DNA of 64,000 nt, taken from assembly GCA_965655095.1 (NCBI GenBank), contig OZ296653.1, positions 71,734,001 through 71,798,000 on the forward strand. Direction: 5' to 3'. Of this stretch, positions 12,800 to 37,700 are shown piece after piece. A program made the position numbers and the translations under genes. Position 1 is the stretch's first letter, and each line of letters begins with the position of its first letter. Below the pieces are notes generated by a model that saw only the letters and a list, made by a program, of their open reading frames with translations, made no database searches and had not been told where the DNA came from. The DNA is from Haplodiscus bocki (Eukaryota).

Positions 12800-14000
12800 G
12801 GCCCGATTACTGCGTTTTGCTTTTTTTGTTCTGAAAGTGTTCAAAAACGCCCTAATTACTGTTTTAGGTGTTAAGATCGGTTTTTCGCATAAAACTAATC
12901 ACTCAAATCGTTTCATTGAAGGCCTAATTTACAGTCTATTTCATGTAGGTTGATTCAGGTGGAGCATTTTTTAAATTTTGTTTTTTGTCTGAAAATAATA
13001 GAGCAAACATTGCTTCTGATGCGTATGCCGTTTTCCGTCAGTTATCTGAACGCTTTCGCTCAATCACTCTTCTTGTTTTGTCTCTTCGGCCTAATCGCTT
13101 GCTTATTATTTGTAAATTGATGCAAGTGGAGCAGTTCTTACTGGTTTTCCTCACATTCCCAAGAGCTTTGGTTCAAAAATACCACGAATGCATATAACGA
13201 ATTTAGTCAAGCTTCTAAAAGCTCTCACACTACTCACTCTGTTCTTCTCATTTACCACTTTTTAACTGTAAATTCCTTTCACTGGCGCAATTTTCGTGAT
13301 TTTGATGTTTTTTTCATTAATGGTGGCCCGAAAAATTCTGCTCAACCTAGTCATTGTAGTCGTTTTTACGAATGTTTTACATCACCCACTGCATTCTTTC
13401 CCTTCACGGATAGGGCCACAGCTTTTTATAAGTAAATTGATTTAACTGGAGAGTTTTTCCAGAGTGTGATCCAGTTTCTAAAAGAGTTTTTGGTCGAAAT
13501 AATGCTACATTTGCTGATGATGGCGCGTCTAGTATTTTTTGAAAATGCTTCCCTTCTTGCACTTTCCACTCAATTGTTCTCATGGCCTAAGTCGCGGCTT
13601 TATGTATGCATGTTCACTTAAAAGAAGCAATTTATCGCAAAGTTGTTCCAACTTCGGAAAATGACGTTCCAAACTGCTTCTGAGGCATATTGTCTTTCAT
13701 GAATTGTTTTTTTTTCGAGTTTTTCATCCAGGGCACAATCGATAGGTCTTCATATATGAATTGATGAGAGGATTTTTTCCGGAGATTGCGTTCCATTTTC
13801 TCAAAATGATGCTCCGGAACTGCTTCAAAGGAAAAGGATGAGGACTTTAGCCATTACTTCAATTGGATCTTTTCTACGCTGTGGATTCTTCCGATCTTGA
13901 GCTTAGTCGGGAGATTTTTGTAGGAAAATCTAATTCATTTCCAATGTCTGTTTGTTTTCATGGAAAGTCTAAGTTTCTAATTGTTTGTTTCATTTCCTAG
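12800..14000. repeat. Highly diverged ~160-bp monomeric tandem repeat (old satellite layer)
   Basis: A recurrent T-rich + TC(G)GAAA-like anchor at ~12830, 12988, 13170, 13328, 13495, 13656, 13802 and 13961 (spacing 146-182). Parallel motifs (A/T)TGCTTC(T/A) at ~13010, 13674, 13819 and GGCCTAA-like at ~12921, 13089, 13584. Confidence 0.5.
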
Positions 14001-15039
14001 AAATTTTGATCCAAATATTTTCAACTTTCCAAAATATTCCTCTAAATTGGACGGTCACTTTAGCTTTTGGGGCTTTGTTTTGTGTAGTTTGGTGAAGCAG
14101 ATGCGCCTTCTCTAGCTACCATCTTTTATATACTAATGTTGTTCAACTGTAATCGGGTTGTCAGTTTCCAAAAACTTTGTTCATTTCAATTGCTCAGCCA
14201 TACCGAATATCAGTTGAAAATTTTTGACAAATCATCAATTGTTTAAAAGAAGTGATCTCGTTCGTGTGCAAAATCAACTTGGTCTCTAATTTAGTCGGCG
14301 CTTTGCGAATAATTGAACGTGCGAGAGTACTAAAGAGGCTTTTTTCGTTTGGTGGACGAAGCTGAAGTCGATATAATTCTCTCGCAAAAGAGAAAGGGTC
14401 TTTATGAAAGGCTGAATCCTGCACCTTACAGAGGAGCACATCAAAACGTGAAAACAGCGTACTTATATGGGAGAAAGATTTGAGCCTTCGCTCCAATTTT
14501 TTCTCGTGAAACCTGCCTTCCATATAGCGACAATTTTTGCGAAAAGATTTATCATTTATTTCTGAAGTAAACGCTTACCCAGGCAGTGAATTTTGAATCA
14601 TTGAATGACTCTTGTTTTTTGACGCTTTCTAGCAGTTTTTTCAAAGACAAAAGATTTTACCATATTTTTGTTGGAGAAGTAAGTTTCCTCAAACAACAGA
14701 CTAGATATTTGCTGGATTTTTTTCGTGCTTTGCGTGCGGCGCCGACTTACTTGAGCTGTTCCCGTGTTTCTGTCGCAAAACTCTGGCGGATAGCGGAGTT
14801 CTTTTCCTAGACTTCACCGATGAGACGCAAAGTGAAGACAAGACAATGTAGTGGTTTTGCACAGACATCCTAATCGGTAATAAATAAAAGTGATCTTCCT
14901 GGCGATTATATAGCCTACAGGTAGCTGGTTAGAATCCCTCTACGAACACTCTTTTGGCTGCTCTTTTACAAATTCTGAATTTTCTGGCCGAAAATTTCTA
15001 TAGGAACAATCTCTACTTTTCCGCTTTTGTTTTAATTCG

Positions 15040-15594
15040 AGCCCTAACCGAACACAAGTGAATTGCAAAACTTTTGCCATGGGAACCTGAGCGGTGGGCC
15101 AAATAGGGCAACTAGTAATGATTTCTCCGGGCTTTTAATCCCTTTTGCTCACGAAGTACCAGTGGGAAATCCAGCAAGATCTCAGCCGACAATTTTTACA
15201 TCAATTGTTAAACATTTAGGGTGTTGGTCCAAGCATGCAAAGCCTGATGGGCCAAAAAGGCAACCAATTGAGTTTTTGATGCTATCTCTCGGCATTGACA
15301 CTCACTTTCTTCAAAAACTAACTGTTGGAGTTCTTCCATCTAGAGATCGAAGCAAACTTGTTCACTTGTAGAAGGGTTTTCAGTATCAATATTTTAAATT
15401 TTGTGCCTCGTATCGGAACCTTCAGAACTGGGAAAGCCAACGAAAGGGACAGCTGAATTTTCTCGCTGTTCAAACTCGATGCCCGCCAGAAGTAACGATT
15501 GGATTTCTTTTATCAGGAGAACAATAACCTGATTTTTTACTTCCAGAAAATCATTCCCTTTCAAGATATTGCATTTTTGGTTTTTGCGTCGTCT
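15040..15594. repeat. Diverged monomers of the same ~167-bp family as the HOR array (transition layer)
   Basis: TGTTGGTCCAAGCATGCAAAGCCTGATGGGCCAAAAAG (~15222) versus array TTTTGGTCCTTGCATGGAAAACCACATGGGCCTCAAAAG. Also CTTTTGCCATGGGAACC...GGGCCAAA (~15071) and TTTTGTGCCTCGTATCGGAACC (~15399). Anchor spacing 156, 177, 185, continuing into the array. Confidence 0.7.
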
Positions 15595-16743
15595 CCTCTG
15601 AAACCTGATTGGCGAAGAAAAGCTATGAATTCGACTATCAAATGAATTTTCTTGACATTGAGATTCTTTCTCATTGAAGCAGACATTTGGATATCTTACA
15701 TCGGGGTGTCAAACGATATTTGTTGACTCGTAGACCGTTCTTTCGATATTTTCATTCTTATGCCTTGAACCGAAATCCTCAGTAGCTGAGATGGCCGACG
15801 CTGGAAAAAGAACCCGATTTCCTCCACAATTAGCGGTTGAATCTTCCCGATCAAACTGAGAATAGACAAATAGCTTCTCTCAGCAAGTTTTTCCAGTTCA
15901 ATGTTTTGGTCCTTGCAGGGAAAACCACATGGGCCTCAAAAGTGTAAGATTTCATTTTGTAAAGCTTTTCTGTGGTACAGAGTCACTTTTGACCTAAATA
16001 TCGATTGATTTTCTGCCGTCCTTATCTCAACCGAAACTTTCAGTACTGGAAGTTCGCTCAATATCAATATCTCCTGCTCTTTCCCTGCGTCGAAAAATTG
16101 ACGAACTGTAAATGAAATTGGTGATGAATTGTTTTACATTCAAAAGCTCCTGCAAATGTACAGTTTGCTTTGTGTCCTTAACTTTTCAATAAACACCCTT
16201 ATACTTCCAAAAGATTTGTCTCTTTGCACCTTGCATCCTGAACATGTGCCTCAAATGCAGAACATTTTGTTTTGTTATTTCCTTTTGTTCTACTAATTCA
16301 CAATCTGACTGAATTTCCGGTTGATTTTCAGCTGTCTAAGACTTAACGAAACTTGATCGCTTGTAGGATTTCTATCAGTTTCAATTTTTTCCTCAGTTTT
16401 GTGTATAGGAAACTTAATGTGCCGAAAAAAAGTTATTTTTCTTCGATTTTTAAACAAGTTCCTGCATAGGTACCGGTGGCATTTCTCCCATTAAGATTTG
16501 AATCATCGGGTATATGCTGGCGAAGTTTTTCTCACTGAATGTTTTTCTGGGTTTTCTTCTTTCTATCGAAAAGCTTCAGTGGCACTTCACAAAACTGTGC
16601 AATAATTATCTTTCGTCGTTACTTAATTTCGATTTCCTTCAAAGCCAAGTTCGTCGCTTTCTTTGGTCAATGTCTCAAGTAACAGATTTCTAACGGCTGA
16701 AATCTTTCAACACGGGCATTCAGGGTTCAGGTTGTGGCCTCCG
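15595..16743. repeat. Edge HOR copy carrying a ~521-bp internal deletion (about 3 monomers)
   Basis: Unit length 1143 versus ~1669. The junction GATTTGTCT-CTTTG-CACCTTGCA at 16222-16226 joins positions equivalent to 17368 and 17889 of the next copy. Confidence 0.9.
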
Positions 16744-19700
16744 AAACCTGATTGGTGAAGAAAAGCGATGAATTCGACTATCAAATGAATTTTCTTGACA
16801 TTGAGACTCTTTCTCATCGAAGCACACCTTTGGATATCTTACATCAGGGTGTCAAACGATATTTGTTGACTCGTAGACCGTTCTTTCGATATTTTCATTC
16901 TTATGCCTCGAACCGAAATCCTCAGTAGCTGAGATGACCGACGCTGGAAAAAGAACCCGATTTCTTCCACAATTAACGGTTGAATCTTCTCTATCAAAGT
17001 GATAATAGACAAATAGCTTCTCTCAGCAAGTTTTTAAAGTTGAATGTTTTGGTCCTTGCATGGAAAACCACAAGGGCCGCAAAAGTGTAAGATTTCAATT
17101 TGTAAAGTTTTTTTTTGTGGTACAGAGTCACTTTTGACCTAAAATATCGATTGATTGTCTGCCGTCCCTATCTCAACCGAAACTCTCAGTACTGGAAGTT
17201 CGCTCAATATCAATATCTCCTGCTCTTTCTCTGCGTCGAAAAATTGACGAACCGTAAATGAAATTAGTGATGAATTGTTTTATATTCAAAAGCTCCTGCA
17301 AATGTACAGTTTGCTTTGTCTCCTCAACTTTTCAATAAACACCCTTATACTTGCAAAAGATTTGTCTCTATGTATTATCTTCTGTTTTGTTCCTTTTTTG
17401 GGAAACCTTCGGTCGAACTTTTTCAAAAGTGAAACTAGTAATTATTTCGGTCGATGCTCACTTTCAATCTAAGAATCCATCGGTGTCGCGTTTTTTTTTT
17501 AAATTTCTAGTGACAGAGTTTTACTACCTGAACGTTTTCAACCTTGACAGGTTAGTTTTCGGTCATGGCATCTATATAAGATTGACCGATCAGGTCGCAA
17601 GTTTTGATTTTCAGTGTTTTTGCTCGCAATCCGAAATCACTTTCCAAAATTAACGATTATATTTGTTGCATCAAGGTCTGCAAGAAAACTTGTCCTCTTG
17701 GAGAGCCTGTGTTCTATCAAAGTTTTTGGTTTTCTGCCTTGCTTCAGAGACATTACAATGTAAAAAGGCTCCAAGTGAAAACCTTTTTTTGATTTTCAAG
17801 CGCATCCTTCAAAAGTAAAGGTTGGAATCGCTCGATCAAAGTGACAGAAAAATAATTGCTACATCCAGCACGGCTGTCCCTTTCGATGCTTTGCACCTTG
17901 CATTCCGAACATCTGCCTCAAATGCAGAACATTTTGTTTTGTTATTGCCTTTCGTTTTACTAACTCAAATTCTGACTGAATTTCCGGTTGATTTTCAGCC
18001 GTCTATGATTCACCGAAACTTGATCGCTTGTAGGAATTCTATCAGTATCAACGTTTTCCTCAGTTTTCTGTATCGGAAACTTGATGTGCCGAAAAATTGA
18101 GTTATTTTTCTTCGATTTTTAAACAAGTTCCTGCATAGGTACCGGTGGAATTTCTCCCATTAAGGTTTGAATCATCGGGTATATGCTGGCGAAATTTTTC
18201 TCACTGAATGTTTTTCTGGGTTTTCTTCTTTCTATCGGAAAGCTTCAGTGGCACTTCACAAAACTGTGCAATAATTATCTTTCGTCGTTACTGAATTTCG
18301 ATTTCCTCCTAAGCCAAGGTCGCCGCTTTCTTTGGTCGAGGTCTCCGGTGACAGATTTCTAACGGCTCAAATTTTTCAACACGAACATTCTGGGTTGAGG
18401 TTGTGGCCTCCGAAACCTGATTGGCGAAGAAAAGCTATGAATTCGACTATCAAATGAATTTTCTTGACATTGAAACTCTTTCTCGTCGAAGCAGACATTT
18501 GGATATCTTACAGCAGGGTGTCAAACGATATTTGTTGACTCATAGACCGTTCTTTCGATATTTTCATTCTTATGTTTTGAACCGAAATCCTCAGTAGCTG
18601 AGATGACCGACGCTGGAAAAAGAACCCGATTTCCTCCACAACTGACGGTTGAATCTTCTCGATCAAAGTGATAATAGACAAATAGCTTCTCTCAGCAAGT
18701 TATTCCAGTTGAATGTTTTGGTCCTTGCATGGAAAACCACAAGGGCCGCAAAAGTGTAAGATTTCTTTTTGTAATGCTTTTTTTGTCGTACAGAGTCACT
18801 TTTGACCTAAAATATCGATTGATTGTCTGCCGTCCCTATCTCAACCGAAACTCTCAGTACTGGAAGTTCGCTCAATATCAATATCTCCTGCTCTTTCTCT
18901 GCGTCGAAAAATTGACGAACCGTAAATAAAATTAGTGATGAATTGTTTTATATTCAAAAGCTCCTGCAAATGTACAGTTTGCTTTGTCTCCTCAACTTTT
19001 CAATAAACACCCTTATACTTGCAAAAGATTTGTCTCTATGTATTATCTTCTGTTTTGTTCCTTTTTTGGGAAACCTTCGGTCAAACTTTTTCAAAAGTGA
19101 AACTAGTAATTATTTCGGTCGATGCTCACTTTCAATCTAAGTATCCATCGGTGTCGCGTTTTTTTAAAAAATTTCTAGTGACAGAGTTTTACTACCTGAA
19201 CGTTTTCAACCATGACAGGTTAGTTTTCGGTCATGGCATCTATATAAGATTGACCGATCAGGTCGCAAGTTTTGATTTTCAGTGTTTTTGCTCGCAATCC
19301 GAAATCACTTTCCAAAATTAACGATTAGATTTGTTGCATCAAGGTCTGCAAGAAAACTTGTCCTCTTGGAGAGCCTCTGTTCTATCAAAGTTTTTGGTTT
19401 TCTGCCTTGCTTCAGAGACATTACAATGTAAAAAGGCTCCAAGTGAAAACCTTTTTTTGATTTTCAAGCGCATCCTCCAAAAGTAAAGGTTGGAATCGCT
19501 CGATCAAAGTGACAGAAAAATAATTGCTACATCCAGCACGGCTGTCCCTTTCGATGCTTTGCACCTTGCATTCCGAACATCTGCCTCAAATGCAGAACAT
19601 TTTGTTTTGTTATTGCCTTTCGTTTTACTAACTCACATTCTGACTGAATTTCCGGTTGATTTTCAGCCGTCTATGATTCACCGAAACTTGATCGCTTGTA

Positions 19701-22700
19701 GGAATTCTATCAGTATCAACGTTTTCCTCAGTTTTCTGTATCGGAAACTTGATGTGCCGAAAAATTGAGTTATTTTTCTTCGATTTTTAAACAAGTTCCT
19801 GCATAGGTACCGGTGGAATTTCTCCCATTAAGATTTGAATCATCGGGTATATGCTGGCGAAATTTTTCTCACTGAATGCTTTTCTGGCTTTTCTTCTTTC
19901 TTTCGGAAAGCTTCAGTGGCACTTCACAAAACTGTGCAATAATTATCTTTCGTCGTTACTGAATTTCGATTTCCTCCAAAGCCAAGTTCATCGCTTTCTT
20001 TGGTCAAGGTCTCAAGTGACAGATTTCTAACGGCTGAAATCTTTCAACACGGGCATTCAGGGTTCAGGTTGTGGCCTCCGAAACCTGATTCGTGAAGAAA
20101 AGCTATGAATTCGACTATCAAATGAATTTTCTTCACATTGAGACTCTTTCTCATCGAAGCAGACCTTTGGATATCTTACATCAGGGTGTCAAACGATATT
20201 TGTTGACTCGTAGACCGTTCTTTCGATGTTTTCATTCTTATGCCTTGAACCGAAATCCTCAGTAGCTGACATGGCCGACGCTGGAAAAAGAACCCGATTT
20301 CCTCCACAACTAACGCTTGAATCTTCTCGATCAAAGTGATAAAAGACAAATAGCTTCTCTCAGCAAGTTTTTCCAGTTGAATGTTTTGGTCCTTGCATGG
20401 AAAACCACAAGGGCCGCAAAAGTGTAAGATTTCTATTTTTAATGCTTTTTTTTGTGGTACAGAGGCACTTTTGACCTAAAATATCGATTGATTGTCTGCC
20501 GTCCCTATCTCAACCGAAACTCTCAGTACTGGAAGGTCTTTCAATATCAATATCTCCTGCTCTTTCCCTGCGTGGGAAAATTGACGAACCGTAAATGAAA
20601 TTAGTGATGAATTGTTTTATATTCAAAAGCTCCTGCAAATGTACAGTTTGCTTTGTGTCCTTAACTTTTCAGTAAACACCCTTATACTTCCAAAAGATTT
20701 GTCTCTGTGTATTATCTTCTGTTCTGTTCCTTTTATGGGAATCCTTGGGTCAAATTTTTTCGAAAGTGAAACTAGTAGTTATTTCGGTCGATGCTCATTT
20801 TCAATCTAAGAATCCATCGGTGTCGCGTTTTTTCTTTAAATTTCGAGTGACAGAGTTTTACTACCTGAACGTTTTCAACCTTGACAGGTTAGCTTTCGGT
20901 CATGGCATCTATATAAGATTGACCGATCAGGTCAAAAGTTTTGATTTTCAGTGTTTTTGCTCGCAATCCGAAATCACTTTCCAAAATTAACCATTAGTTT
21001 TGTTGCATCAAGGTCTGCAAGAAAACTTGTCCTCTTGGAGAGCCTGTGTTCTATCAAAGTTTTTGGTTTTCTGCCTTGCTTCAGAGACCTTACAATGTAA
21101 AAAGGCCTCCAAGTGAAAACCTTTTTTTTGATTTTCAAGCGCATCCTCCAAAAGTAAAGGTTGGAATCGCTCGATCAAAGTGACAGAAGAATAATTGCTA
21201 CTTCCAGCACGGCTGTCCCTTTCGATGCTTTGCACCTTGCATTCCGAACATGTGCCTCAAATGCAGAACTTTTTGTTTTGCTACTGCCTTTCGTTTTACT
21301 AACTCACATTCTGACTGAATTTCCGGTTGATTTTCAGCCGTCTAAGATTCACCGAAACTTGATCGCTTGTAGGAATTCTATCAGTATCAACGTTTTCTTC
21401 AGTTTTCTGTATCGGAAACTTGATGTGCCGAAAAATTGAGTTATTTTTCTTCGATTTTTAAACAAGTTCCTGCATAAGTACCGGTGGAATTTCTCCCATT
21501 AAGATTTGAATCATCGGGTATATGCTGGCGAAACTTTTCTCAGTGAATGTTTTTCTGGGTTTTCTTTTTCTTTCGGAAAGCTTCAGTGGCACTTCACAAA
21601 ACTGTGCAATAATTTTCTTTCGTCGTTACTGAATTTCCATTTCCTTCAAAGCCAAGTTCATCGCTTTCTTTGGTCAAGGTCTCAAGTTACAGATTTCTAA
21701 CGGCTGAAATCTTTCAACACGGGCATTCAGGGTTCAGGTTGTGGCCTCCGAAACCTGATTGGTGAAGAAAGCTATGAATTCGACTATCAAATGAATTTTC
21801 TTGACATTGAAACTCTTTCTCGTCGAAGCAGACATTTGGATATCTTACACCAGGGTGTCAAACGATATTTGTTGACTCGTAGACCGTTCTTTCGATATTT
21901 TCATTCTTATGCCTCGAACCGAAATCCTCAGTAGCTGAGATGACCGACGCTGGAAAAGGAACCTGATTTCCTCCACAATTAACGGTTGAATCTTCTCTAT
22001 CAAAGTGATAATAGACAAAAAGCTTCTCTCAGCAAGTTTTTCCAGTTGAATGTTTTGGTCCTTGCATGGAAAACCACAAGGGCCGCAAAAGTGTGCGATT
22101 TCATTTTGTAATGCTTTTTTGTGGTACAGTCACTTTTGACCTAAAATATCGGTTGATTGTCTGCCGTCCCTATCTCAACCGAAACTCTCAGTACTGGAAG
22201 GTCTTTCAATATCAATATCTCCTGCTCTTTCCCTGCGTGGGAAAATTGACGAACCGTAAATGAAATTAGTGATGAATTGTTTTATATTCAAAAGCTCCTG
22301 CAAATGTACAGTTTGCTTTGTCTCCTTAACTTTTCAATAAACACCCTTATACTTGCAAAAGATTTGTCTCTATGTATTATCTTCTGTTCTGTTCCTTTTT
22401 TGGGAAACCTTCGGTCAAACTTTTTCAAAAGTGAAACTAGTAATTATTTCGGTCGATGCTCACTTTCAATCTAAGAATCCATCGGTGTCGCGTTTTTTCT
22501 TTAAATTTCGAGTGACAGAGTTTTACTACCTGAACGTTGTCAACCTTGACAGGTTAGTTTTCGGTCATGGCATCTATATAAGATTGACCGATCAGGTCAA
22601 AAGTTTTGATTTTCAGTGTTTTTGCTCGCAATCCGAAATCACTTTCCATAATTAACGATTAGTTTTGTCTCATCAAGGTCTGCAAGAAAACTTGTCCTCT

Positions 22701-25700
22701 TGGAGAGCCTGTGTTCTATCAAAGTTTTTGGTTTTCTGCCTTGCTTCATAGACCTTACAATGTAAAAAGGCCTCCAAGTGAAAACATTTTTTTGATTTTC
22801 AAGCGCATCCTCCAAAAGTAAAGGTTGGAATCGCTCGATCAAAGTGACAGAAAAATAATTGCTACTTCCAGCACGGCTGTCCCTTTCAATGCTTTGCTCC
22901 TTGCATTTTTGAACATGTGCCTCAAATGGAGAATATTTTTTTTCCTTTCGTTCCACTAACTCACATTCTGACTGAATTTCCGGTTGATTTTCAGCCGTCT
23001 AAGACTCATCGAAACTTGATCGCTTGTAGTATTTCTATCAGTATCATTATTTTCCTCAGTTTTTTGTATCGGAAACTTGATGTGCCGAAAAAATGAGTTA
23101 ATTTTCTTCGATTTTTAAACAAGTACCTGCATAGGTACCGGTGGAATTTCTCCCATTAGGATTTGAATCATCGGGTATATGCTGGCGAAGTTTTTCTGAT
23201 TGAATATTCTTCTTGGTTTTCTTCTTTCTATCGGAAAGCTTCAGTGGCACTTCACAAAACTGTGCAATAATTTTCTTTCGTCGTTACTGAATTTCCATTT
23301 TCTTCAAAGCCAAGTTCATCGCTTTCTTTGGTCAAGGTCTCAAGTTACAGATTTCTAACGGCTGAAATCTTTCAACACGGGCATTCAGGGTTCAGGTTGT
23401 GGCCTCCGAAACCTGATTGGTGAAGAAAGCTATGAATTCGACTATCAAATGAATTTTCTTGACATTGAAACTCTTTCTCGTCGAAGCAGACATTTGGATA
23501 TCTTACACCAGGGTGTCAAACGATATTTGTTGACTCGTAGACCGTTCTTTCGATATTTTCATTCTTATGCCTTGAACCGAAATCCTCAGTAGCTGAGATG
23601 ACCGACGCTGGAAAAGGAACCTGATTTCCTCCACAATTAACGGTTGAATCTCGATCAAAGTGATAATAGACAAATAGCTTCTCTCAGCAAGTTTTTCCAG
23701 TTGAATGTTTTGGTCCTTGCATGGAAAACCACAAGGGCCGCAAAAAAGTGAGATTTCAATTCGTATTACTTTTTTTGTGCTACAGAGTCACTTTTGACCT
23801 AAAATATCGGTTGATTGTCTGCCGTCCCTATGTCAACCGAAACTCTCAGTACTGGAAGGTCTTTCCTTATCAATATCTCCTGCTCTTTCCCTGCGTCGGA
23901 AAGTTGACGAACCGTAAATGAAATTAGTGATGAATTGTTTTATATTCAAAAGCTCCTGCAAATGTACAGTTTGCTTTGTCTCCTTAACTTTTCAATAAAC
24001 ACCCTTATACTTGCAAAAGATTTGTCTCTATGTATTATCTTCTGTTTTGTTCTTTTTATGGGAAACCTTGGGTCAAACTTTTTCAAAAGTGAAACTAGTA
24101 ATTATTTCGGTCGATGCTCACTTTCAATCTAAAAATCCATCGGTGTCGCGTTTTTTCTTTTCGAGTGACAGAGTTTTACCACCTGAACGTTTTCAACCTT
24201 GACAGGTTAGTTTTTGGTCATGGCATCTATATAAGATTGACCGATCAGGTCGCAAGTTTTGATTTTCAGTGTTTTTGCTGGCAATCCGAAATCACTTTCC
24301 AAAATTAACGATTAGTTTTGTTGCATCGAGGTCTGCAAGAAAACTTGTCCTCTTGGAGAGCCTGTGTTCTATCAAAGTTTTTGGCTTTCTGCCTTGCTTC
24401 AGAGACCTTACAATGTAAAAAGGCCTCCAAGTGAAAACATTTTTTTGATTTTCAAGCGCATCATCCAAAAGTAACGGTTGGAATTGTTCGATCAAAAAGA
24501 CAAAATAAAAATTGCTACTTCCAGCACGGCTGTCCCGTTCAATGCTTTGCTCCTTGCATTTTTGAACATGTGCCTCAAATGCAGAATATTTTGTTTAATT
24601 TCCTTTCGTTCCACTAACTCACATTCTGACTGAATTTCCGGTTGATTTTCAGCCGTCTAAGACTCACCGAAACTTGATCGCTTGTAGGATTTCTATCAGT
24701 ATCAATATTTTCCTCAGTTTTCTGTATCGGAAACTTGATGTGCCGAAAAAATGAGTTATTCTTTCTCCGATTTTTAAACAAGTTCCTGCATAGGTACCGG
24801 TGGAATTTCTCCCATTAAGATTTGAATCATCGGGTATATGCTGGCGAAATTTTTCTCACTGATTATTTATCTGGGTTTTCTTCTTTCTATCGGAAAGCTT
24901 CAGTGGCACTTCACAAAACTGTGCAAGAATTTTCTTTCGTCGTTACTGAATTTCGATTTCCTCCAAAGCCAAGTTCGTCGCTTTCTTTGGTCAAGATCTC
25001 AAGTGACAGATTTCTAACGGCTGAAATCTTTCAACACGGGCATTCAGGGTTCAGGTTGTGGCCTCCGAAACCTGATTGGTGAAGAAAAGCTATGAGTTCG
25101 ACTATCGAATGAATTTTCTTGACATTGAGACTCTTTCTCATCGAAGCAGACATTTAGATATCTTACATCAGGGTGTCAAGCGATATTTGTTGACTCGTAG
25201 ACCCTTCTTTCGATATTTTCATTCTTATGCCTTGAACCGAAATCCTCAGTAGCTGAGATGGCCGACGCTGGAAAAAACCCGATTTTCTCCGCGATTAACG
25301 GTTGAATCTTCTCGATCAAAGTGATAGTAGACAAATAAAATCTCTCAGCAAGTTTTTCCAGTTGAATGTTTTGGTCCTTGCATGGAAAACCACAAGGACC
25401 GCAAAAGTGTAATATTTCAATTTTTAATGCTTTTTTTTGTGGTAAAGTGTCACTTTTGACCTAAAATATCGATTGATTGTCTGCCGTCCTTATCTCAACC
25501 GAAACTCTCAGTACTGGAAGGTCTTTCAATATCAATATCTCCTGCTCTTTCCGTGCGTCGGAAAATCGACGAACTGTAAATGAAATTAGTGATTAATTGT
25601 TTTATATTCAAAAGCTCCTGCAAATGTACAGTTTGCTTTGTGTCCTTAACTTTTCGTTAAACACCCTTATACTTGCAAAAGATTTGTCTCTATGTATTAT

Positions 25701-28700
25701 CTTCTGTTTTGTTTCTTATATGGGAAAACTTGGGTCAAATTTTTTCAAAAGTGAAACTAGTAAATATTTCGGTCGATGCTCACTTTCAATCTAAGAATCC
25801 ATCGGTGTCGCGTTTTTTCATTAAATTTCGAGTGACAGTTTTACTACCTGAACGTTGTCAACCTTGACAGGTTAGTTTTCGGTCGTGGCATCTATTTAAG
25901 ATTGACCGATCAAGCCACAAGTTTTGATTTTCAGTGTTTTTTCTCGCAATCCAAAATCACTTTCCAAACTTAACGATTACATATTTTGCATCAAGGTCTG
26001 CAAGAAAACTTGTCCTCTTGGAGAGCCTGTGTTCTATCAAAGTTTTTGGTTTTCTGCCTTGCTTCAGAGACCTTACAATGTAAAAAGGCCTCCAAGTGAA
26101 AACATTTTTTTGATTTTAAAGCGCATCCTCCAAAAGTAACGGTTGGAATTGTTCGATCAAAAAGACAAAATAAAAATTGCTACTTCCAGCACGGCTGTCC
26201 CTTTCAATGCTTTGCTCCTTGCATTTCTGAACATGTGCCTCAAATGCAGATTATTTTGTTTTATTTCCTTTCGTTCCACTAACTCACATTCTGACTGAAC
26301 TTCCGGTTGATTTTGAGCCGTCTAAGACTCACCGAAACTTGATCGCTTGTAGGATTTCTATCAGTATCAATATTTTCCTCAGTTTTCTGTATCGGAAACT
26401 TGATGTGCCGAAAAAATGAGTTATTTTTTCTTCGATTTTTGAACAAGTTCCTGCATAGGTACCGGTGGCATTTCTCCCATTAAGATTTGAATCATCGGGT
26501 ATATGATGGCGAAATTTTTCTCACTGAATGTTTTTCTGGGTTTTCTTCTTTCTATCGGAAAGCTTCAGTGGCACTTCACAAAACTGTGCAATAATTATTT
26601 TTCGTCGTTACTGAATTTCGATTTCCTCCAAAGCCAAGTTCGTCGCTTTCTTTGGTCAAGATCTCAAGTGACAGATTTCTAACGGCTGAAATCTTTCAAC
26701 AGGGGCATTCAGGGTTCAGGTTGTGGCCTCCGAAACCTGATTGGTGAAGAAAAGCTATGAGTTCGACTATCGAATGAATTTTCTTGACATTGAGACTCTT
26801 TCTCATCGAAGCAGACATTTAGATATCTTACATCAGGGTGTCAAGCGATATTTGTTGACTCGTAGACCCTTCTTTCGATATTTTCATTCTTATGCCTTGA
26901 ACCGAAATCCTCAGTAGCTGAGATGGCCGACGCTGGAAAAAACCCGATTTTCTCCGCGATTAACGGTTGAATCTTCTCGATCAAAGTGATAGTAGACAAA
27001 TAAAATCTCTCAGCAAGTTTTTCCAATTGAATGTTTTGGTCCTTGCATGGAAAACCACAAGGACCGCAAAAGTGTAATATTTCAATTTTTAATGCTTTTT
27101 TTTGTGGTAAAGTGTCACTTTTGACCTAAAATATCGATTGATTGTCTGCCGTCCTTATCTCAACCGAAACTCTCAGTACTGGAAGGTCTTTCAATATCAA
27201 TATCTCCTGCTCTTTCCGTGCGTCGGAAAATCGACGAACTGTAAATGAAATTAGTGATTAATTGTTTTATATTCAAAAGCTCCTGCAAATGTACAGTTTG
27301 CTTTGTGTCCTTAACTTTTCGTTAAACACCCTTATACTTGCAAAAGATTTGTCTCTATGTATTATCTTCTGTTTTGTTTCTTATATGGGAAAACTTGGGT
27401 CAAATTTTTTCAAAAGTGAAACTAGTAAATATTTCGGTCGATGCTCACTTTCAATCTAAGAATCCATCGGTGTCGCGTTTTTTCATTAAATTTCGAGTGA
27501 CAGTTTTACTACCTGAACGTTGTCAACCTTGACAGGTTAGTTTTCGGTCGTGGCATCTATTTAAGATTGACCGATCAAGCCACAAGTTTTGATTTTCAGT
27601 GTTTTTTCTCGCAATCCAAAATCACTTTCCAAACTTAACGATTACATTTGTTGCATCAAGGTCTGCAAGAAAACTTGTCCTCTTGGAGAGCCTGTGTTCT
27701 ATCAAAGTTTTTGGTTTTCTGCCTTGCTTCAGAGACCTTACAATGTAAAAAGGCCTCCAAGTGAAAACATTTTTTTGATTTTAAAGCGCATCCTCCAAAA
27801 GTAACGGTTGGAATTGTTCGATCAAAAAGACAAAATAAAAATTGCTACTTCCAGCACGGCTGTCCCTTTCAATGCTTTGCTCCTTGCATTTCTGAACATG
27901 TGCCTCAAATGCAGATTATTTTGTTTTATTTCCTTTCGTTCCACTAACTCACATTCTGACTGAACTTCCGGTTGATTTTGAGCCGTCTAAGACTCACCGA
28001 AACTTGATCGCTTGTAGGATTTCTATCAGTATCAATATTTTCCTCAGTTTTCTGTATCGGAAACTTGATGTGCCGAAAAAATGAGTTATTTTTTCTCCGA
28101 TTTTTAAACAAGTTCCTGCATAGGTACCGGTGGAATTTCTCCCATTAAGATTTGAATCATCGGGTATATGCTGGCGAAATTTTTCTCACTGAATAATATT
28201 CTGGGTTTTCTTCTTTCTATCGGAAAGCTTCAGCGGCACTTCACGAAACTGTGCAAGAATTATCTTTCGTCGTTACTGAATTTCGATTTCCTCCAAAGCC
28301 AAGTTCGTCGCTTTCTTTGGTCAAGATCTCAAGTGACAGATTTCTAACGGCTGAAATCTTTCAACACGGGCATTCAGGGTTCAGGTTGTGGCCTCCGAAA
28401 CCTGATTGGTGAAGAAAAGCTATGAGTTTGACTATCAAATGAATTTTCTTGACATTGAGACTCTTTCTCATCGAAGCAGACATTTAGATATCTTAAATCA
28501 GGGTGTCAAACGGTATTTGTTGACTCGTAGACCCTTCTTTCGATATTTTCATTCTTTTGCCTTGAACCAAAATCCTCAGTAGCTGAGATGGCCGACGCTG
28601 GAAAAAACACGATTTCCTCCACGATTAACGGTTGAATCTTCTCGATCAAAGTGATAATAGACAAATAGCTTCTCTCAGCAAGTTTTTCCAGTTGAATGTT

Positions 28701-31700
28701 TTGGTCCTTGCAGGGAAAACCACATGGGCCTCAAAAGTGTAAGATTTCAAATTGTAATGTTTTTTTGTGGTACAGAGTCACTTTTGACCTAAATATCGAT
28801 TGATTTTCTGCCGTCCTCATCTCAACCGAAACTCTCAGTACTGGAAGGTCTTTCAATATCATTATCTCCTGCTCTTTCCCTGCGTCGGAAAATCGACGAA
28901 CTGTAAATGAAATTAGTGATTAATTGTTTTATATTCAAAAGCTCCTGCAAATGTACAGTTTGCTTTGTGTCCTTAACTTTTCGTTAAACACCCTTATACT
29001 TGCAAAAGATTTGTCTCTTTGTATTGTGTTCTGTTTTGTTCCTTTTATGGGAGACCTTGGGTCAAACTTTTTCAAAAGTGAAACTAGTAATTATTCCGGT
29101 CGATGCTCACTTTCAATCTAAGAATCCATCGGTGTCGCGTTTTTTCTTTAAATTTCGAGTGACAGAGTTTTACTACCTGAACGTTGTCAAACTTGACAGG
29201 TTAGTTTTCGGTCGTGGCATCTATAAAAGATTGACCGATCAAGCCACAAGTTTTGATTTTCAGTGTTTTTTCTCGCAATCCAAAATCACTTTCCAAACTT
29301 AACGATTACATTTGTTGCATCAAGGTCTGCAAGAAAACTTGTCCTCTTGGAGAGCCTGTGTTCTATCAAAGTTTTTGGTTTTCTGCCTTGCTTCAGAGAC
29401 CTTACAATGTAAAAAGGCCTCCAAGTGAAAACATTTTTTTGATTTTCAAGCGCATCCTCCAAAAGTAACGGTTGGAATTGTTCGATCAAAAAGACAAAAT
29501 AAAAATTGCTACTTCCAGCACGGCTGTCCCTTTCAATGCTTTGCTCCTTGCATTTCTGAACATGTGCCTCAAATGCAGATTATTTTGTTTTATTTCCTTT
29601 CGTTCCACTAACTCACATTCTGACTGAACTTCCGGTTGATTTTGAGCCGTCTAAGACTCACCGAAACTTGATCGCTTGTAGGATTTCTATCAGTATCAAT
29701 ATTTTCCTCAGTTTTCTGTATCGGAAACTTGATGTGCCGAAAAAATGAGTTATTCTTTCTCCGATTTTTAAACAAGTTCCTGCATAGGTACCGGTGGAAT
29801 TTCTCCCATTAAGATTTGAATCATCGGGTATATGCTGGCGAAATTTTTCTCACTGAATAATATTCTGAGTTTTCTTCTTTCTATCGGAAAGCTTCAGCGG
29901 CACTTCACGAAACTGTGCAAGAATTATCTTTCGTCGTTACTGAATTTCGATTTCCTCCAAAGCCAAGTTCGTCGCTTTCTTTGGTCAAGATCTCAAGTGA
30001 CAGATTTCTAACGGCTGAAATCTTTCAACACGGGCATTCAGGGTTCAGGTTGTGGCCTCCGAAACCTGATTGGTGAAGAAAAGCTATGAGTTCGACTATC
30101 GAATGAATTTTCTTGACATTGAGACTCTTTCTCATCGAAGCAGACATTTAGATATCTTACATCAGGGTGTCAAGCGATATTTGTTGACTCGTAGACCCTT
30201 CTTTCGATATTTTCATTCTTATGCCTTGAACCGAAATCCTCAGTAGCTGAGATGGCCGACGCTGGAAAAAACCCGATTTTCTCCGCGATTAACGGTTGAA
30301 TCTTCTCGATCAAAGTGATAATAGACAAATAACTTCTCTCAGCAAGTTTTTCCAGTTGAATGTTTTGGTCCTTGCATGGAAAACCACAAGGGCCGCAAAA
30401 ATGTAATATTTCAATTTTTAATGCTTTTTTGTGGTAAAGTGTCACTTCTGACCTAAAATATCGATTGATTGTATGCCGTCCCTATCTCAACCGAAACTCT
30501 CAGTACTGGAAGGTCTTTCAATATCAATATCTCCTGCTCTTTCTCTGCGTCGGAAAATTGACGAACCGTAAATGATATTAGTGATGAATTGTTTTATATT
30601 CAAAAGCTCCTGCAAATGTAGTTTGCTTTGTCTCCTTAACTTTTCAATAAACACCCTTATACTTGCAAAAGAATTGTCTCTATGTATTATCTTCTGTTTT
30701 GTTCCTTTTATGGGAAACCTTGGGTTAAACTTTATCAAAAGTGAAACTAGTAATTATTTCGGTCGATGCTCACTTTCAATCTAAGAATCCATCGGTGTCC
30801 CGTTTTTCCTTTAAATTTCGATTGACAGAGTTTTAATACCTGAACGTTGGCAACCTTGACAGGTTAGTTTTCGGTCGTGGCATCTATATTAGGTTGACCG
30901 ATCAAGCCACAAGTTTTGACTTTCAGTGTTTATTCTCGCAATCCAAAATCACTTTCCAAACTTAACGATTACATTTGTTGCATCAAGGTCTGCAAGAAAA
31001 CTTGTCTTTTTGGAGAGCCTGTGTTCTATCAAAGTTTTTGGTTTTCTGCCTTGCTTCAGAGACCTTACAATGTAAAAAGGCCTCCAAGTGAAAACATTTT
31101 TTTGATTTCCAAGCGCATCCTCCAAAAGTATCGGTTGGAATTGTTCGATCAAAAAGACAAAATAAAAATTGCTACTTCCAGCACGGCTGTCCCGTTCAAT
31201 GCTTTGCTCCTTGCATTTTTGAACATGTGCCTCAAATGCAGAATATTTTGTTTTATTTCCTTTCGTTCCACTAACTCACATTCTGACTGAATTTCCGGTT
31301 GATTTTCAGCCGTCCAAGACTTAACGAAACTTGATCGCTGGTAGGATTTCTATCAGTATCAATATTTTCCTCAGTTTTCTGTATCGGAAACTTGATGTGC
31401 CGAAAAATTGAGTTAGTCTTTCTCCGATTTTTAAACAAGTTCCTGCATAGGTACCGGTGGAATTTCTCACATTAAGATTTGAATCATCGGGTATATGCTG
31501 GCGAAATTTTTCTCACTGAATATTTATTGGGTTTTCTTCTTTCTATCGGAAAGCTTCAGCGGCACTTCACGAAACTGTGCAAGAATTATCTTTCGTCGTT
31601 ACTGAATTTCGATTTCCTCCAAAGCCAAGTTCGTCGCTTTCTTTGGTCAAGATCTCAAGTGACAGATTTCTAACGGCTGAAATCTTTCAACACGGGCATT

Positions 31701-34700
31701 CAGGGTTCAGGTTGTGGCCTCCGAAACCTGATTGGTGAAGAAAAGCTATGAGTTCGACTATCGAATGAATTTTCTTGACATTGAGACTCTTTCTCATCGA
31801 AGCAGACATTTAGATATCTTACATCAGGGTGTCAAGCGATATTTGTTGACTCGTAGACCCTTCTTTCGATATTTTCATTCTTATGCCTTGAACCGAAATC
31901 CTCAGTAGCTGAGATGGCCGACGCTGGAAAAAACCCGATTTTCTCCGCGATTAACGGTTGAATCTTCTCGATCAAAGTGATAGTAGACAAATAAATTCTC
32001 TCAGCAAGTTTTTCCGGTTGAATGTTTTGGTCCTTGCATGGAAAACCACAAGGGCCGCAAAAGTGTAATATTTCAATTTTTAATGCTTTTTTTTGTGGTA
32101 AAGTGTCATTTTTGACCTAAAATATCGATTGATTGTCTGCCGTCCTTATCTCAACCGAAACTCTCAGTACTGGAAGGTCTTTCAATATCAATATCTCCTG
32201 CTCTTTCCCTGCGTCGGAAAATCGACGAACTGTAAATGAAATTAGTGATGAATTGTTTTATATTCAAAAGCTCCTGCAAATTTAGTTTGCTTTGTCTCCT
32301 TAACTTTTCAATAAACACCGTTATACTTGCAAAAGAATTGTCTCTATGTATTATCTTCTGTTTTGTTCCTTTTATGGGAAACCTTGGGTCAAACTTTTTC
32401 AAAAGTGAAACTAGTAAATATTTCGGTCGATGCTCACTTTCAATCTAAGAATCCATCGGTGTCGCGTTTTTTCTTTAAATTTCGAGTGACAGAGTTTTAC
32501 TACCTGAACGTTGTCAACCTTGACAGGTTAGTTTTCGGTCGTGGCATCTATTTAAGATTCACCGATCAAGCCACAAGTTTTGATTTTCAGTGTTTTTTCT
32601 CGCAATCCAAAATCACTTTCCAAACATAACGATTATAGTTGTTGCATCAAGGTCTGCAAGAAAACTTGTCCTCTTGGAGAGCCTGTGTTCTATCAAAGTT
32701 TTTGGTTTTCTGCCTTGCTTCAGAGACCTTACAATGTAAAAAGGCCTCCAAGTGAAAACATTTTTTTGATTTTCAAGCGCATCCTCCAAAAGTAACGGTT
32801 GGAATTGTTCGATCAAAAAGACAAAATAAAAATTGCTACTTCCAGCACGGCTGTCCCTTTCAATGCTTTGCTACTTGCATTTCTGAACATGTGCCTCAAA
32901 TGCAGATTATTTTGTTTTATTTCCTTTCGTTCCACTAACTCACATTCTGACTGAATTTTCGGTTGATTCTCAGCCTTCTAAGACTCACGGAAACTTGATC
33001 GCCTGTAGGATTTCTATCAGTATCATTATTTTCCTCAGTTTTCCGTATCGGAAACTTGATGTGCCGATAAAATGGAGTTATTCTTTCCGATTTTTAAACA
33101 AGTTGCTGCATAGGTACCGGTGGAATTTCTCCCATTAAGATCTGAGTCATCGGGTATATGCTGGCGAAATTTTTCTTTACTGAATGTTTTTCTGGGTTTT
33201 CTTCTTTCTATCGGAAAGCTTCAGTGGCACTTCACAAAACTGTGCAATGATTATTTTTCGTCGTTACTGAATTTCGATTTCCTCCTAAGCCAAGGTCGTC
33301 GCTTTCTTTGGTCGAGGTCTCAAGTGACAGATTTCTAACGGCTGAAATTTTTCAACACGGACATTCTGGGTTCAGGTTGTGGCCTCCGAAACCTGATTGG
33401 TGAAGAAAAGCTATGAGTTTGACTATCAAATGAATTTTCTTGACATTGAGACTCTTTCTCATCGAAGCAGACATTTAGATATCTTAAATCAGGGTGTCAA
33501 ACCGTATTTGTTGACTCGTAGACCCTTCTTTCGATATTTTCATTCTTATGCCCTGAACCGAAATCCTCAGTAGCTGAGATGGCCGACGCTGGAAAAAACA
33601 CGATTTCCTCCACGATTAACGGTTGAATCTTCTCGATCAAAGTGATAATAGACAAATAACTTCTCTCAGCAAGTTTTTCCAGTTGAATGTTTTGGTCCTT
33701 GCATGGAAAACCACAAGGGCCGCAAAAGTGTAATATTTCAATTTTTAATGCTTTTTTTTGTGGTAAAGTGTCACTTCTGACCTAAAATATCGATTGATTG
33801 TATGCCGTCCCTATCTCAACCGAAACTCTCAGTACTGGAAGGTCTTTCAATATCAATATCTCCTGCTCTTTCTCTGCGTCGGAAAATTGATGAACCGTAA
33901 ATGATATTAGTGATGAATTGTTTTTTATTCAAAAGCTCCTGCAAATGTAGTTTGCTTTGTCTCCTTAACTTTTCAATAAACACCCTTATACTTGCAAAAC
34001 AATTGTCTCTATGTATTATCTTCTGTTTTGTTCCTTTTATGGGAAACCTTGGGTCAAACTTTTTAAAAAGTGAAACTAGTAATTATTTCGGTCGATGCTC
34101 ACTTTCAATCTAAGAATCCATCGGTGTCGCGTTTTTTTCAAAGAAATTTCGAGTGACATAGTTTTACTACATGAACGTTTTCAGCCTTGACAGGTTAGTT
34201 TTTGGTCGTGGCATCTATATAAGATTGACTGATCAAGCCACAATTTTTGATTTTCAGTGTCTTTCCTCGCAATCCAAATTCACTTTCCACAATTAACTAT
34301 TAGATTTGTTGCATCATGGTCTGCAAGAAAACTTGTCCTCTTGGAGAGCCTTTGTTCTATCAAAGTTTTTGGTTTTTATGCCTTGCTTTAGAGAGCTTAC
34401 AATGTAAAAAGGCCTCCAAGTGAAAACCTTTCTTTGATTTTCAAGCGCATCCTCCAAAAGTAACGGCTGGAATTGTTCGATCAAAGTGACAGAAAAATAA
34501 TTGCTACTTCCAGCACGGCTGTCCCTTTCGATGCTTTGCACCTTGCATTCCGAACATGTGCCTCAAATGCAGAACATTTTGTTTTATTATTGCCTTTCGT
34601 TCCACTAACTCACATTCTGACTGAACTTCCGGTTGATTTTGAGCCGTCCAAGACTCACCGAAACTTGATCGCTTGTAGGATTTCTATCAGTATCAATATT

Positions 34701-37700
34701 TTCCTCAGTTTTCTGTATCAGAAACTTTGATGTGCCGAAAAAATGAGTTTTTTCTCAGATTTTTAAACAAGTTCCTGCATAGGTACCGGTGGAATTTCTC
34801 CCATTAAGATTTGAATCATCGGGTATATGCTGGCGAAATTTTTCTCACTGAATAATATTCTGGGTTTTCTTCTTTCTATCGGAAAGCTTGAGCGGCACTT
34901 CACGAAACTGTGCAAGAATTATCTTTCGTCGTTACTGATTTTCGATTTCCTCCAAAGCCAAGTTCGTCGCTTTCTTTGGTCAAGATCTCAAGTGACAGAT
35001 TTCTAACGGCTGAAATCTTTCAACAAGGGCATTCAGGGTTCAGGTTGTGGCCTCCGAAACCTGATTGGTGAAGAAAAGCTATGAGTTCGACTATCGAATG
35101 AATTTTCTTGACATTGAGACTCTTTCTCATCGAAGCAGACATTTAGATATCTTACATGAGGGTGTCAAGCGATATTTGTTGACTCGTAGACCCTTCTTTC
35201 GATATTTTCATTCTTATGCCTTGAACCAAAATCCTCAGTAGCTGAGATGGCCGACGCTGGAAAAAACCCGATTTTCTCCGCGATTAACGGTTGAATCTTC
35301 TCGATCAAAGTGATATTAGACAAATAACTTCTCTCAGCAAGTTTTTCCAGTTGAATGTTTTGGTCCTTGCATGGAAAACCACAAGGGCCGCAAAAGTGTA
35401 ATATTTCAATTTTTAATGCTTTTTTTTTGTGGTAAAGTGTCACTTCTGACCTAAAATATCGATTGATTGTATGCCGTCCCTATCTCAACCGAAACTCTCA
35501 GTACTGGAAGGTCTTTCAATATCAATATCTCCTGCTCTTTCTCTGCGTCGGAAAATTGACGAACCGTAAATGAAATTCGTGATGATTTGTTTTATATTCA
35601 AAAGCTCCTGCAAATGTACAGTTTGCTTTGTGTCCTTAACTTTTCGATAAACACTCTTATACTTGCAAAAGATTTGTCTCTTTGTATTGTCTTCTGTTTT
35701 GTTCCTTTTATGGGAAACCTTGGGTCAAACTTTTTCAAAAGTGAAGCTAGTAATTATTTCGGTCGATGCTCACTTTCAATCTAAGAATCCATCGGTGTCG
35801 CGTTTTTTCTTTAAATTTCGAGTGACAGAGTTTTACTACCTGAACGTTGTCAACCTTGACAGGTTAGTTTTCGGTCGTGGCATCTATATAAGGTTGACCG
35901 ATCAAGCCACAAGTTTTGATTTTCAGTGTTTTTTCTCGCAATCCAAAATCACTTTCCAAACTTATCGATTATATTTGTTGCATCAAGGTCTGCAAGAAAA
36001 CTTGTCTTTTTGGAGAGCCTGTGTTCTATCAAAGTTTTTGGTTTTCTGCCTTGCTTCAGAGACCTTACAATGTAAAAAGGCCTCCAATTGAAAACATTTT
36101 TTTGATTTTCAAGCGCATCCTCCAAAAGTAACGGTTGGAATTGTTCGATCAAAAAGACAAAATAAAAAATGCTACTTCCAGCACGGCTGTCCCGTTCAAT
36201 GCTTTGCTCCTTGCATTTTTGAACATATGCCTCAAATGCAGAATATTTTGTTTTATTTCCTTTCGTTCCACTAACTCACATTCTGACTGAACTTCCGGTT
36301 GATTTTGAGCCGTCTAAGACTCACCGAAACTTGATCGCTTGTAGGATTTCTATCAGTATCAATGTTTTCCTCAGTTTTCTGTATCGGAAACTTGAAGTGC
36401 CGAAAAAATGAGTTATTTTTTCTCCGATTTTCAAACAAGTTCCTGCATAGGTACCGGTGGAATTTCTCCCATTAAGATTTGAATCATCGGGTATATGCTG
36501 GCGAAATTTTTCTCACTGAATAATATTCTGGGTTTTCTTCTTTCTATCGGAAAGCTTCAGCGGCACTTCACGAAACTGTGCAAGAATTATCTTTCGTCGT
36601 TACTGAATTTCGATTTCCTCCAAAGCCAAGTTCGTCGCTTTCTTTGGTCAAGATCTCAAGTGACAGATTTCTAACGGCTGCAATCTTTAAACACGGGAAT
36701 TCAGGGTTCAGGTTCTGGCCTCCGAAACCTGATTGGTGAAGAAAAGCTATGAGTTCGACTATCGAATGAATTTTCTTGACATTGAGACTCTTTCTCATCG
36801 AAGCAGACATTTAGATATCTTACATCAGGGTGTCAAGCGATATTTGTTGACTCGTAGACACTTCTTTCGATATTTTCATTCTTATGCCTTGAACCGAAAT
36901 CCTCAGTAGCTGAGATGGCCGACGCTGGAAAAAACCCGATTTTCCCCGCGATTAACGGTTGAATCTTCTCGATCAAATTGATAATAGACAAATAACTTCT
37001 CTCAGCAAGTTTTTCCAGTTGAAAGTTTTGGTCCTTGCATGGAAAACCACAAGGGCCGCAAAAGTGTAATATTTCAATTTTTAATGCTTTTTTTTGTGGT
37101 AAAGTGTCACTTCTGACCTAAAATATCGATTGATTGTATGCCGTCCCTATCTCAACCGAAACTCTCAGTACTGGAAGGTCTTTCAATATCAATATCTCCT
37201 GCTCTTTCTCTGCGTCGGAAAATTGACGAACCGTAAATGATATTAGTGATGAATTGTTTTGTATTCAAAAGCTCCTGCAAATGTAGTTTGCTTTGTCTCC
37301 TTAACTTTTCAATAAACACCCTTATACATGCAAAACAATTGTCTCTATGTAATATCTTCTGTTTTGTTCCTTTTATGGGAAACCTTGGGTCAAACTTTTT
37401 CAAAAGTGAAACTCGTAATTATTTCGGTCGATGCTCACTTTCAATCTAAGAATCCATCGGTGTCGCGTTTTTTCTTTAAATTTCGAGTGACAGAGTTTTA
37501 CTACCTGAACGTTGTCAACCTTGACAGGTTAGTTTTCGGTCGTGGCATCTATATAAGGTTGACCGATCAAGCCACAAGTTTTGATTTTCAGTGTTTTTTC
37601 TCGCAATCCAAAATCACTTTCCAAACTTATCGATTACATTTGTTGCATCAAGGTCTGCAAGAAAACTTGTCTTTTTGGAGAGCCTGTGTTCTATCAAAGT

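What the first reader, a model, noticed from the sequence alone, without database searches (positions are those of the whole stretch)
12800..15600. Layered array edge: old monomeric satellite grading into the homogeneous HOR
Seen: immediately left of the array (15040-15594) are three or four diverged monomers recognisably of the array family, in phase with it. Further left (12800-14000) is an even more decayed ~160-bp periodic zone. The 14.0-15.0 kb stretch is T-rich with only weak anchors. Unique DNA and TE debris lie beyond. Established: primate centromeres show unique DNA -> old monomeric layers -> active HOR (layered expansion). Inference: this window captures the same architecture independently, preserving fossil predecessors of the current array within ~3 kb.
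Basis: partly seen in the sequence, partly recalled or inferred. Interest (0 to 1): 0.75.

Follow-up and report, generated by a model that had tools for sequence, protein, structure and literature searches.

The report
Old relic monomers at satellite edge
At the left end of a long 1.67-kb tandem repeat sit three much older, single-copy copies of its ~166-bp building block, joined to the array in register; this is a clear but ordinary "array-end" relic, and the periodic zone further left is an unrelated small repeat.

Summary
Partly confirmed. The array (15595 to beyond 64000) repeats a 1665-bp unit, copies 92-99% alike. The unit is ten eroded ~166-bp monomers arranged as two pentamer halves.

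A monomer profile finds exactly three tandem monomers left of the array. They lie at 15117-15277 (19 bits), 15278-15451 (67 bits) and 15452-15594 (56 bits). Random flanks never exceed 7.8 bits. The third monomer joins the tail of array monomer 10 in monomer register.

There is no grading. Identity steps from about 62% to about 93% at 15575-15595.

The edge dimer is as far from monomers 1-2 (61.8%) as from monomers 6-7 (62.5%), and those differ equally from each other (62.9%). So it dates from about the time the two halves split. It is a true older relic, not a decayed modern copy.

The zone 12923-13899 is a real array of six ~163-bp units, about 50% alike. It shows no detectable homology to the array family in either direction.

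13900-15116 is non-periodic. Read contigs show the flank is single-copy and the junction real.

Nothing indicates a centromere. Earlier scan notes report many similar arrays elsewhere in this genome.

The parts
12923..13899 (+). Zone Z: six tandem ~163-bp units (starts 12923, 13089, 13246, 13409, 13585, 13740), about 50% alike, single-copy, with no detectable homology to the array monomers
   Evidence: Searches show periodicity, iterative nhmmer hits and pairwise scores up to 30 against a null of -1.8 +/- 5. Searches show no cross-homology. One search shows unique depth.
13900..15116 (.). Non-periodic spacer between zone Z and the relic monomers; no family hits, no coding signal
   Evidence: no hit with E below 5 on the + strand; no ~165 peak; segment e0 within the null range; ORFs have no Pfam match
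15117..15277 (+). Relic monomer e1. It is weakly preserved and its type is ambiguous (type 2/7 14 bits, type 5/10 9.7 bits). Its tail is the best match to the tail of array monomer 10.
15278..15451 (+). Relic monomer e2, of type m1/m6
   Evidence: 67 bits; 63 bits to the type 1/6 profile
15452..15594 (+). Relic monomer e3 (head only), of type m2/m7. It is fused in monomer register to the tail of array monomer 10.
   Evidence: Searches give one continuous profile alignment 15456-15630 with an 8-base insertion at the joint. Searches give the type assignment.
15575..15595 (+). Junction interval between the relic (about 62% to the array) and the array (above 90%), inside the shared motif TTGC.TCG..GAAACC
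   Evidence: (family D1). It is bridged by independent read contigs that reach 15624-15629.
15595..16737 (+). First array unit, a 1143-bp variant lacking consensus positions 633-1151 (about three monomers; the deletion is roughly in register, m4/m7 hybrid)
   Evidence: loose ends at 16222-16273 match the canonical units
16738..64000 (+). Canonical array of 1658-1676-bp units, 28 full units plus a part, running off the window. Each unit has ten ~166-bp monomers arranged as two ~830-bp halves.

Best explanation
This is an ordinary satellite array end that preserves a small relic of the array's own ancestry. The steps below are inferred unless marked as shown.

1. An old tandem array of ~166-bp monomers had already diversified into five types.
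2. At about one time, three lineages of the same type-1/type-2 stretch separated. Two became the halves of today's ten-monomer unit. The third was left at the left margin.
3. The ten-monomer block was later amplified and kept homogeneous, presumably by unequal exchange and conversion, to at least 29 copies that are 92-99% alike.
4. The three marginal monomers (15117-15594) lay outside the exchanging domain and drifted as single-copy DNA to about 62% identity.
5. The joint between relic and array is in monomer register: a type-2/7 head joined to the tail of monomer 10, inside a motif shared by the monomers. That is the expected footprint of an exchange between misaligned monomers.

The six-unit ~163-bp array at 12.9-13.9 kb is a separate, equally eroded short tandem repeat with no demonstrable kinship to the family.

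Shown here: the monomers, their types, the register, the three-way equidistance, single-copy status, and the lack of homology of zone Z. Inferred: the order of events and the exchange mechanism. No function, centromeric or other, is indicated.
For: - Monomer profile hits only at 15123-15269, 15281-15439 and 15456-15630 in the 15.6-kb flank. Random controls reach at most 7.8 bits.
- A continuous profile alignment runs across the joint.
- Type assignment: e2 matches m1/m6 and e3 matches m2/m7.
- Three-way alignment gives 62.9 / 61.8 / 62.5% identity, with informative site patterns 41 / 38 / 40.
- Array copies are 92-99% alike.
- Edge units carry more private changes, Spearman -0.45, p 0.018.
- Unique-depth contigs cover 12800-15629 with 0-3 differences and cross the joint.
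- The array-end effect is established knowledge: McAllister & Werren 1999, as reviewed in PMC5615363.
Against: - e1 cannot be typed with confidence, so colinearity of the relic with the unit rests on two monomers plus one tail.
- Equidistance assumes similar substitution rates in relic and array.
- The breakpoint can only be placed within about 20 bases.
- The array interior cannot be validated by the short-read contigs.
- The within-array gradient is weak and its units are not independent.
- The other end of the array was not seen.
Confidence: 0.7

Rival explanations
1. The window holds a primate-like layered centromere edge, in which the 12.9-13.9 kb zone is the oldest layer of the same family, the 15.1-15.6 kb monomers are a middle layer, and the array is the active core.
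For: - Zone Z has nearly the same period as the array monomers (about 163 against about 166 bp).
- It shares the array's T-over-A strand bias: T 38%, A 24% against T 35%, A 27%.
- It lies only 1.2 kb from the relic.
- Its units are about as eroded (50%) as the array's monomer types are from one another (47%).
Against: - There is no homology in either direction at a sensitivity that detects all ten monomer types and the weak e1.
- The profile-profile score is within the null, and the reverse strand scores equally.
- A non-periodic 1.2-kb spacer separates the zone from the relic.
- There is one abrupt step in identity, not graded layers.
- Array depth is only tens of times the unique level (a rough figure).
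- Earlier scan notes list many unrelated kilobase-unit arrays in this genome.
Confidence: 0.1
2. Late re-amplification of fossil DNA. The ~166-bp monomer array was long dead and single-copy when an arbitrary 1.67-kb piece of it was tandemly amplified, as appears to have happened to transposon pieces elsewhere in this genome. On this reading e1-e3 are simply the un-amplified continuation of the fossil, and the array is a macrosatellite rather than a homogenised higher-order repeat.
For: - There is a large gap between about 62% (halves and relic) and 92-99% (copies), with nothing in between.
- Monomer types are only about 47% alike.
- Earlier notes describe kilobase-unit arrays born from LINE, hAT and recombinase fragments in this genome.
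- Depth suggests tens of copies, probably at one locus.
Against: Under simple segmental amplification the left flank should continue colinearly into the first unit. Instead a type-2/7 head meets a monomer-10 tail. Monomer 10 also stays homologous to its partner monomer 5 across the unit boundary (alignment). So the unit boundary is not a novel chimeric joint. Both points rest on short, eroded stretches.
Confidence: 0.2

Closest known systems
Array-end effect in satellite DNA (McAllister & Werren 1999; reviewed in PMC5615363)
   Same: Repeats at the end of an array escape homogenisation and are far more divergent than interior repeats. Here the relic monomers are about 62% alike to the array against 92-99% between interior copies, and units near the edge carry more private changes.
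   Different: Here the end repeats are not merely drifted modern copies. They are equidistant from both halves of the unit, so they predate or coincide with the pentamer doubling.
Layered expansion of human and ape alpha-satellite centromeres (Altemose et al., 10.1101/2021.07.12.452052)
   Same: A homogeneous multi-monomer array of nucleosome-length monomers is bordered by older, diverged monomers of the same family, next to unique DNA.
   Different: The relic is only three monomers (about 480 bp) and a single step, not kilobase-to-megabase layers. Symmetry was not seen, there is no centromere evidence, and the outer periodic zone is not of the family. The array's monomers are far more eroded (about 47%) than alpha-satellite monomers within an HOR.
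Locus-specific macrosatellites amplified from pre-existing sequence (for example the transposon-derived arrays in earlier notes on this genome)
   Same: Kilobase unit, tens of copies, apparently one locus, sharp boundary with single-copy DNA.
   Different: The unit is itself an old tandem array. The boundary is an in-register hybrid monomer rather than an arbitrary breakpoint.

Membership tests
Layered centromeric satellite architecture (primate alpha-satellite type) | Homogeneous array of multi-monomer (higher-order) units built from nucleosome-length monomers | tested here: met
   1665-bp unit with copies 92-99% alike. Ten ~166-bp monomers: iterative nhmmer recovers nine, and harmonics appear at 167, 330, 503, 674 and 827.
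Layered centromeric satellite architecture (primate alpha-satellite type) | Successive flanking layers of the same family, with divergence increasing outward | tested here: not met
   Only one step occurs (about 93% to about 62%) and the relic holds only three monomers. The next 1.2 kb has no family signal. The outer periodic zone shows no homology. A weak gradient inside the array exists.
Layered centromeric satellite architecture (primate alpha-satellite type) | Mirror symmetry: older layers on both sides of the core | not testable with these tools
   The array runs off the window at 64000.
Layered centromeric satellite architecture (primate alpha-satellite type) | Centromere function (CENP-A / kinetochore occupancy) of the core | not testable with these tools
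   No chromatin data are available. The rough depth ratio of about 20-75x argues against a genome-wide centromeric family but not against a chromosome-specific one.
Satellite array-end relic (end effect) | Terminal repeats of the same family, tandem and in register with the array | tested here: met
   Three consecutive profile hits spaced 158-175 bp, with a continuous alignment across the joint.
Satellite array-end relic (end effect) | Terminal repeats markedly more divergent than interior repeats | tested here: met
   About 62% against 92-99%. Private changes per unit fall with distance from the edge.
Satellite array-end relic (end effect) | Terminal repeats are part of this locus, not a dispersed element or an assembly artefact | tested here: met
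   Unique-depth contigs from four runs (two samples at most, one study, possibly the source of the assembly) cover 12800-15629 and cross the joint by 30-35 bases.

The most novel reading that the evidence does not exclude
The array is one arm of a real, chromosome-specific centromere in a non-vertebrate animal, built by the same layered-expansion process as primate centromeres. On this reading zone Z is its oldest layer, eroded beyond recognition, and the relic dimer is a datable intermediate of the monomer to pentamer to decamer history.
Probability: 0.06. Interest if true: 0.75.

Novelty: new member of a known kind. Interest (0 to 1): 0.3.

Why it matters
The locus gives a clean, small-scale record of how a multi-monomer satellite unit was built. 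A third lineage, as old as the doubling of the pentamer, is stranded at the edge and joined in register. That supports unequal exchange between monomers as the process that set the array boundary. Beyond that it is a textbook array-end effect. It does not by itself show a centromere or an independent origin of primate-like layering.

Tried and rejected
- Tandem Repeats Finder found neither the array (period above 500) nor the eroded monomers. Custom autocorrelation and nhmmer were needed instead.
- Single-sequence searches of the unit consensus against the flank found only 15.1-15.6 kb, plus borderline minus-strand scraps at 12525-12579 and 3359-3401.
- A fourth monomer at 14950-15116 was rejected; its scores lie within the null range.
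- Homology of zone Z to the family was rejected three ways.
- A transposon or coding origin of the flank was not supported. ORFs in 6.4-15.6 kb have no Pfam match, apart from one sub-threshold DUF755 hit. Rfam found nothing in 1-24000. No terminal inverted repeats bracket the spacer.
- Look-up of the spacer sequence in earlier findings was blank.
- The organism was not established. Run names are coded, and earlier notes disagree between coral and acoel.

Full report
THE ARRAY

From 15595 to the end of the window the sequence is a tandem array. The period is 1658-1676 bp. Twenty-seven aligned full units are 92-99% identical.

The consensus unit (1665 bp) is an old dimer of two ~830-bp halves, about 60% alike. 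It shows a weak harmonic series at about 167, 330, 503, 674 and 827 bp. Iterative nhmmer from a single 167-bp seed recovers nine of ten monomers. First-round E-values, which are independent of training, range from 8.5e-6 to 0.04.

Cutting at the anchors gives ten monomers that pair 1/6, 2/7, 3/8, 4/9 and 5/10 at 55-62% identity. All other pairs are 36-52% alike. This agrees with earlier scan notes on this window, which I re-derived rather than assumed.

THE BOUNDARY

High identity to the unit begins at 15588-15595 (family D1). The first unit (15595-16737) is a 1143-bp variant that lacks consensus positions 633-1151.

THE NEAR ZONE, 15040-15594

A profile of the ten consensus monomers was scanned over 1-18500 on both strands. 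It gives exactly three significant hits left of the array:
- 15123-15269: 19.4 bits, E 9e-6
- 15281-15439: 67.1 bits, E 2e-20
- 15456-15630: 56.4 bits, E 3e-17

Nothing else in the flank is better than E 0.07. On 30 Markov-1 random flanks the best score was 7.8 bits, and on the reversed flank 2.0 bits.

The hits are tandem, 158-175 bp apart. The third aligns continuously across 15595 with only an 8-base insertion. The relic and the array are therefore in monomer register. The segment 14950-15116 shows nothing, so there are three monomers, not four.

Type-specific profiles assign e2 to type 1/6 (63 bits) and the e3 head to type 2/7 (30 bits). e1 is ambiguous, at 14 bits to type 2/7 and 9.7 bits to type 5/10. 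Its tail is the best match of monomer 10's tail. The relic thus reads roughly 10-like, 1-like, 2-like. It is then cut and joined to the tail of monomer 10, after which the array runs 1, 2, 3 and so on.

AGE OF THE RELIC

I aligned m1-m2, m6-m7 and e2-e3 together over 275 shared columns.

| Pair | Identity |
|---|---|
| m1-m2 vs m6-m7 | 62.9% |
| m1-m2 vs e2-e3 | 61.8% |
| m6-m7 vs e2-e3 | 62.5% |

The three informative site patterns number 41, 38 and 40. This is a trichotomy. The relic is not a decayed copy of today's unit, because that would make it much closer to one half. It is a third lineage that separated at about the time the pentamer doubled.

There are no intermediates. Identity jumps from about 62% to about 93% at the joint, so "grading" is the wrong word.

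Inside the array there is a modest gradient. The five leftmost units have 9-30 private changes each and a best identity to any other unit of 94.7-96.9%. The nine rightmost listed units (46713-60087) have 0-11 private changes; eight of them have a best identity of 98.2-99.1%, and the unit at 46713 has 96.0%. Spearman correlations with position are -0.45 (p 0.018) and +0.48 (p 0.012). The units are not independent, so this is suggestive only.

THE FAR ZONE, 12800-14000

Banded autocorrelation shows peaks at 165, 321 and 489-495 bp. These are absent from 14000-15100 and from three control flank segments.

Iterative nhmmer from one unit finds two more units at E 0.0015-0.0017 in the first round. 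Three more follow at E 0.002-0.007 in the second round. That makes six tandem units, 12923-13899. They are about 50% alike in a multiple alignment. Pairwise global scores reach 30 against a null of -1.8 +/- 5 with a maximum of 13. So the periodicity is real.

Homology to the array family is not detectable:
- The monomer profile scores at most 2.7 bits in the zone.
- The zone profile scores at most 3.1 bits on the whole array, and nothing on e1-e3.
- A gapped profile-profile comparison over all phases scores 16.4 against 13.1 +/- 2.5 for column shuffles. Seven of 100 shuffles reach it, and the reverse complement scores 16.1.

The same monomer profile detects all ten mutually 36-62%-identical monomers of the unit and the weak e1. 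If zone Z is kin, it is more remote than anything in the family. The shared period and shared T-over-A bias leave a small residual chance of very deep kinship.

THE MIDDLE, 13900-15116

This stretch has no ~165-bp periodicity and no profile hits. Its ORFs have no Pfam match. It is only mildly T-rich.

READS

Four public runs hold the stretch. They come from one study and at most two samples, and may be the source of the assembly.

Their contigs cover 12800-15629 in single pieces at unique depth with 0-3 differences. They stop 30-35 bases into the array, where summed depth rises roughly 20-75-fold. From this I draw three points:
- The junction is not an assembly artefact.
- Zone Z, the spacer and the relic are single-copy at 95% identity or more.
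- The array family has on the order of tens of copies genome-wide, so it is probably this one locus.

The tool warns that summed contig depth is not a copy number, so the last point is rough.

INTERPRETATION

The well-supported reading is the classical array-end effect. Terminal repeats escape homogenisation, as reviewed in PMC5615363. Here there is one added detail: the stranded monomers are as old as the pentamer doubling, and they are joined to the array by an in-register hybrid monomer. That is the footprint expected of exchange between misaligned monomers.

I cannot settle whether the ten-monomer block was continuously homogenised or was re-amplified late from fossil DNA. The hybrid joint and the continuity of the m5/m10 homology across the unit boundary lean against simple segmental amplification.

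The analogy with primate layered expansion (10.1101/2021.07.12.452052) holds only in minimal form. There is one thin older layer on one side, and no evidence of centromere function. Earlier scan notes list many other kilobase-unit arrays, several read as "layered", elsewhere in this genome. I did not test those. They suggest that this is a common feature of the genome rather than a special locus.

LIMITS

- The organism is unknown to me.
- The far end of the array is outside the window.
- The array interior is not validated by long reads.

Noticed in passing
window 15595-16737: The first array unit is a 1143-bp variant lacking consensus positions 633-1151 (about three monomers). Its breakpoint near 16223-16239 makes an approximately in-register m4/m7 hybrid. 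Read contigs from canonical units diverge exactly there.
   Followed up: partly
window 16738-64000: The array has at least three homogenisation blocks: left (16738-25061, 94-97%), middle (25062-46712, 95-99%) and right (48381 onward, 97-99%). A few middle units (33383, 40050, 41719) resemble the right block more than the other middle units do.
   Followed up: partly
window 14650-15200: Read contigs show loose ends at 14654, 14911 and 15191, and one joint skipping 14938-15169 (232 bp). The joint has only 22 bases on its shorter side, at depth near the unique level. This could be an allelic indel or a short shared repeat; it is unexplained.
   Followed up: no
window 16273-16423: Almost no contig of any of the four runs lies here at 95% identity or more, although neighbouring bins are deep. 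The tool warns that a hole proves nothing.
   Followed up: no
window 12525-12579 (minus strand): A 49-bp stretch is 75% identical to consensus positions 984-1031 in reverse orientation (blastn E 5.5e-4, nhmmer E 0.021). This is borderline: possibly a stray inverted monomer scrap, or chance.
   Followed up: no
window 6852-6898 and 7427-7473: 47-nt inverted repeats, 79% complementary, lie 528 bp apart. This is a MITE-like structure in the left flank.
   Followed up: no
window 2557-6339 (+): An uninterrupted 1260-codon ORF rich in C2H2-like zinc-finger motifs. It is already the subject of another note on this window.
   Followed up: no
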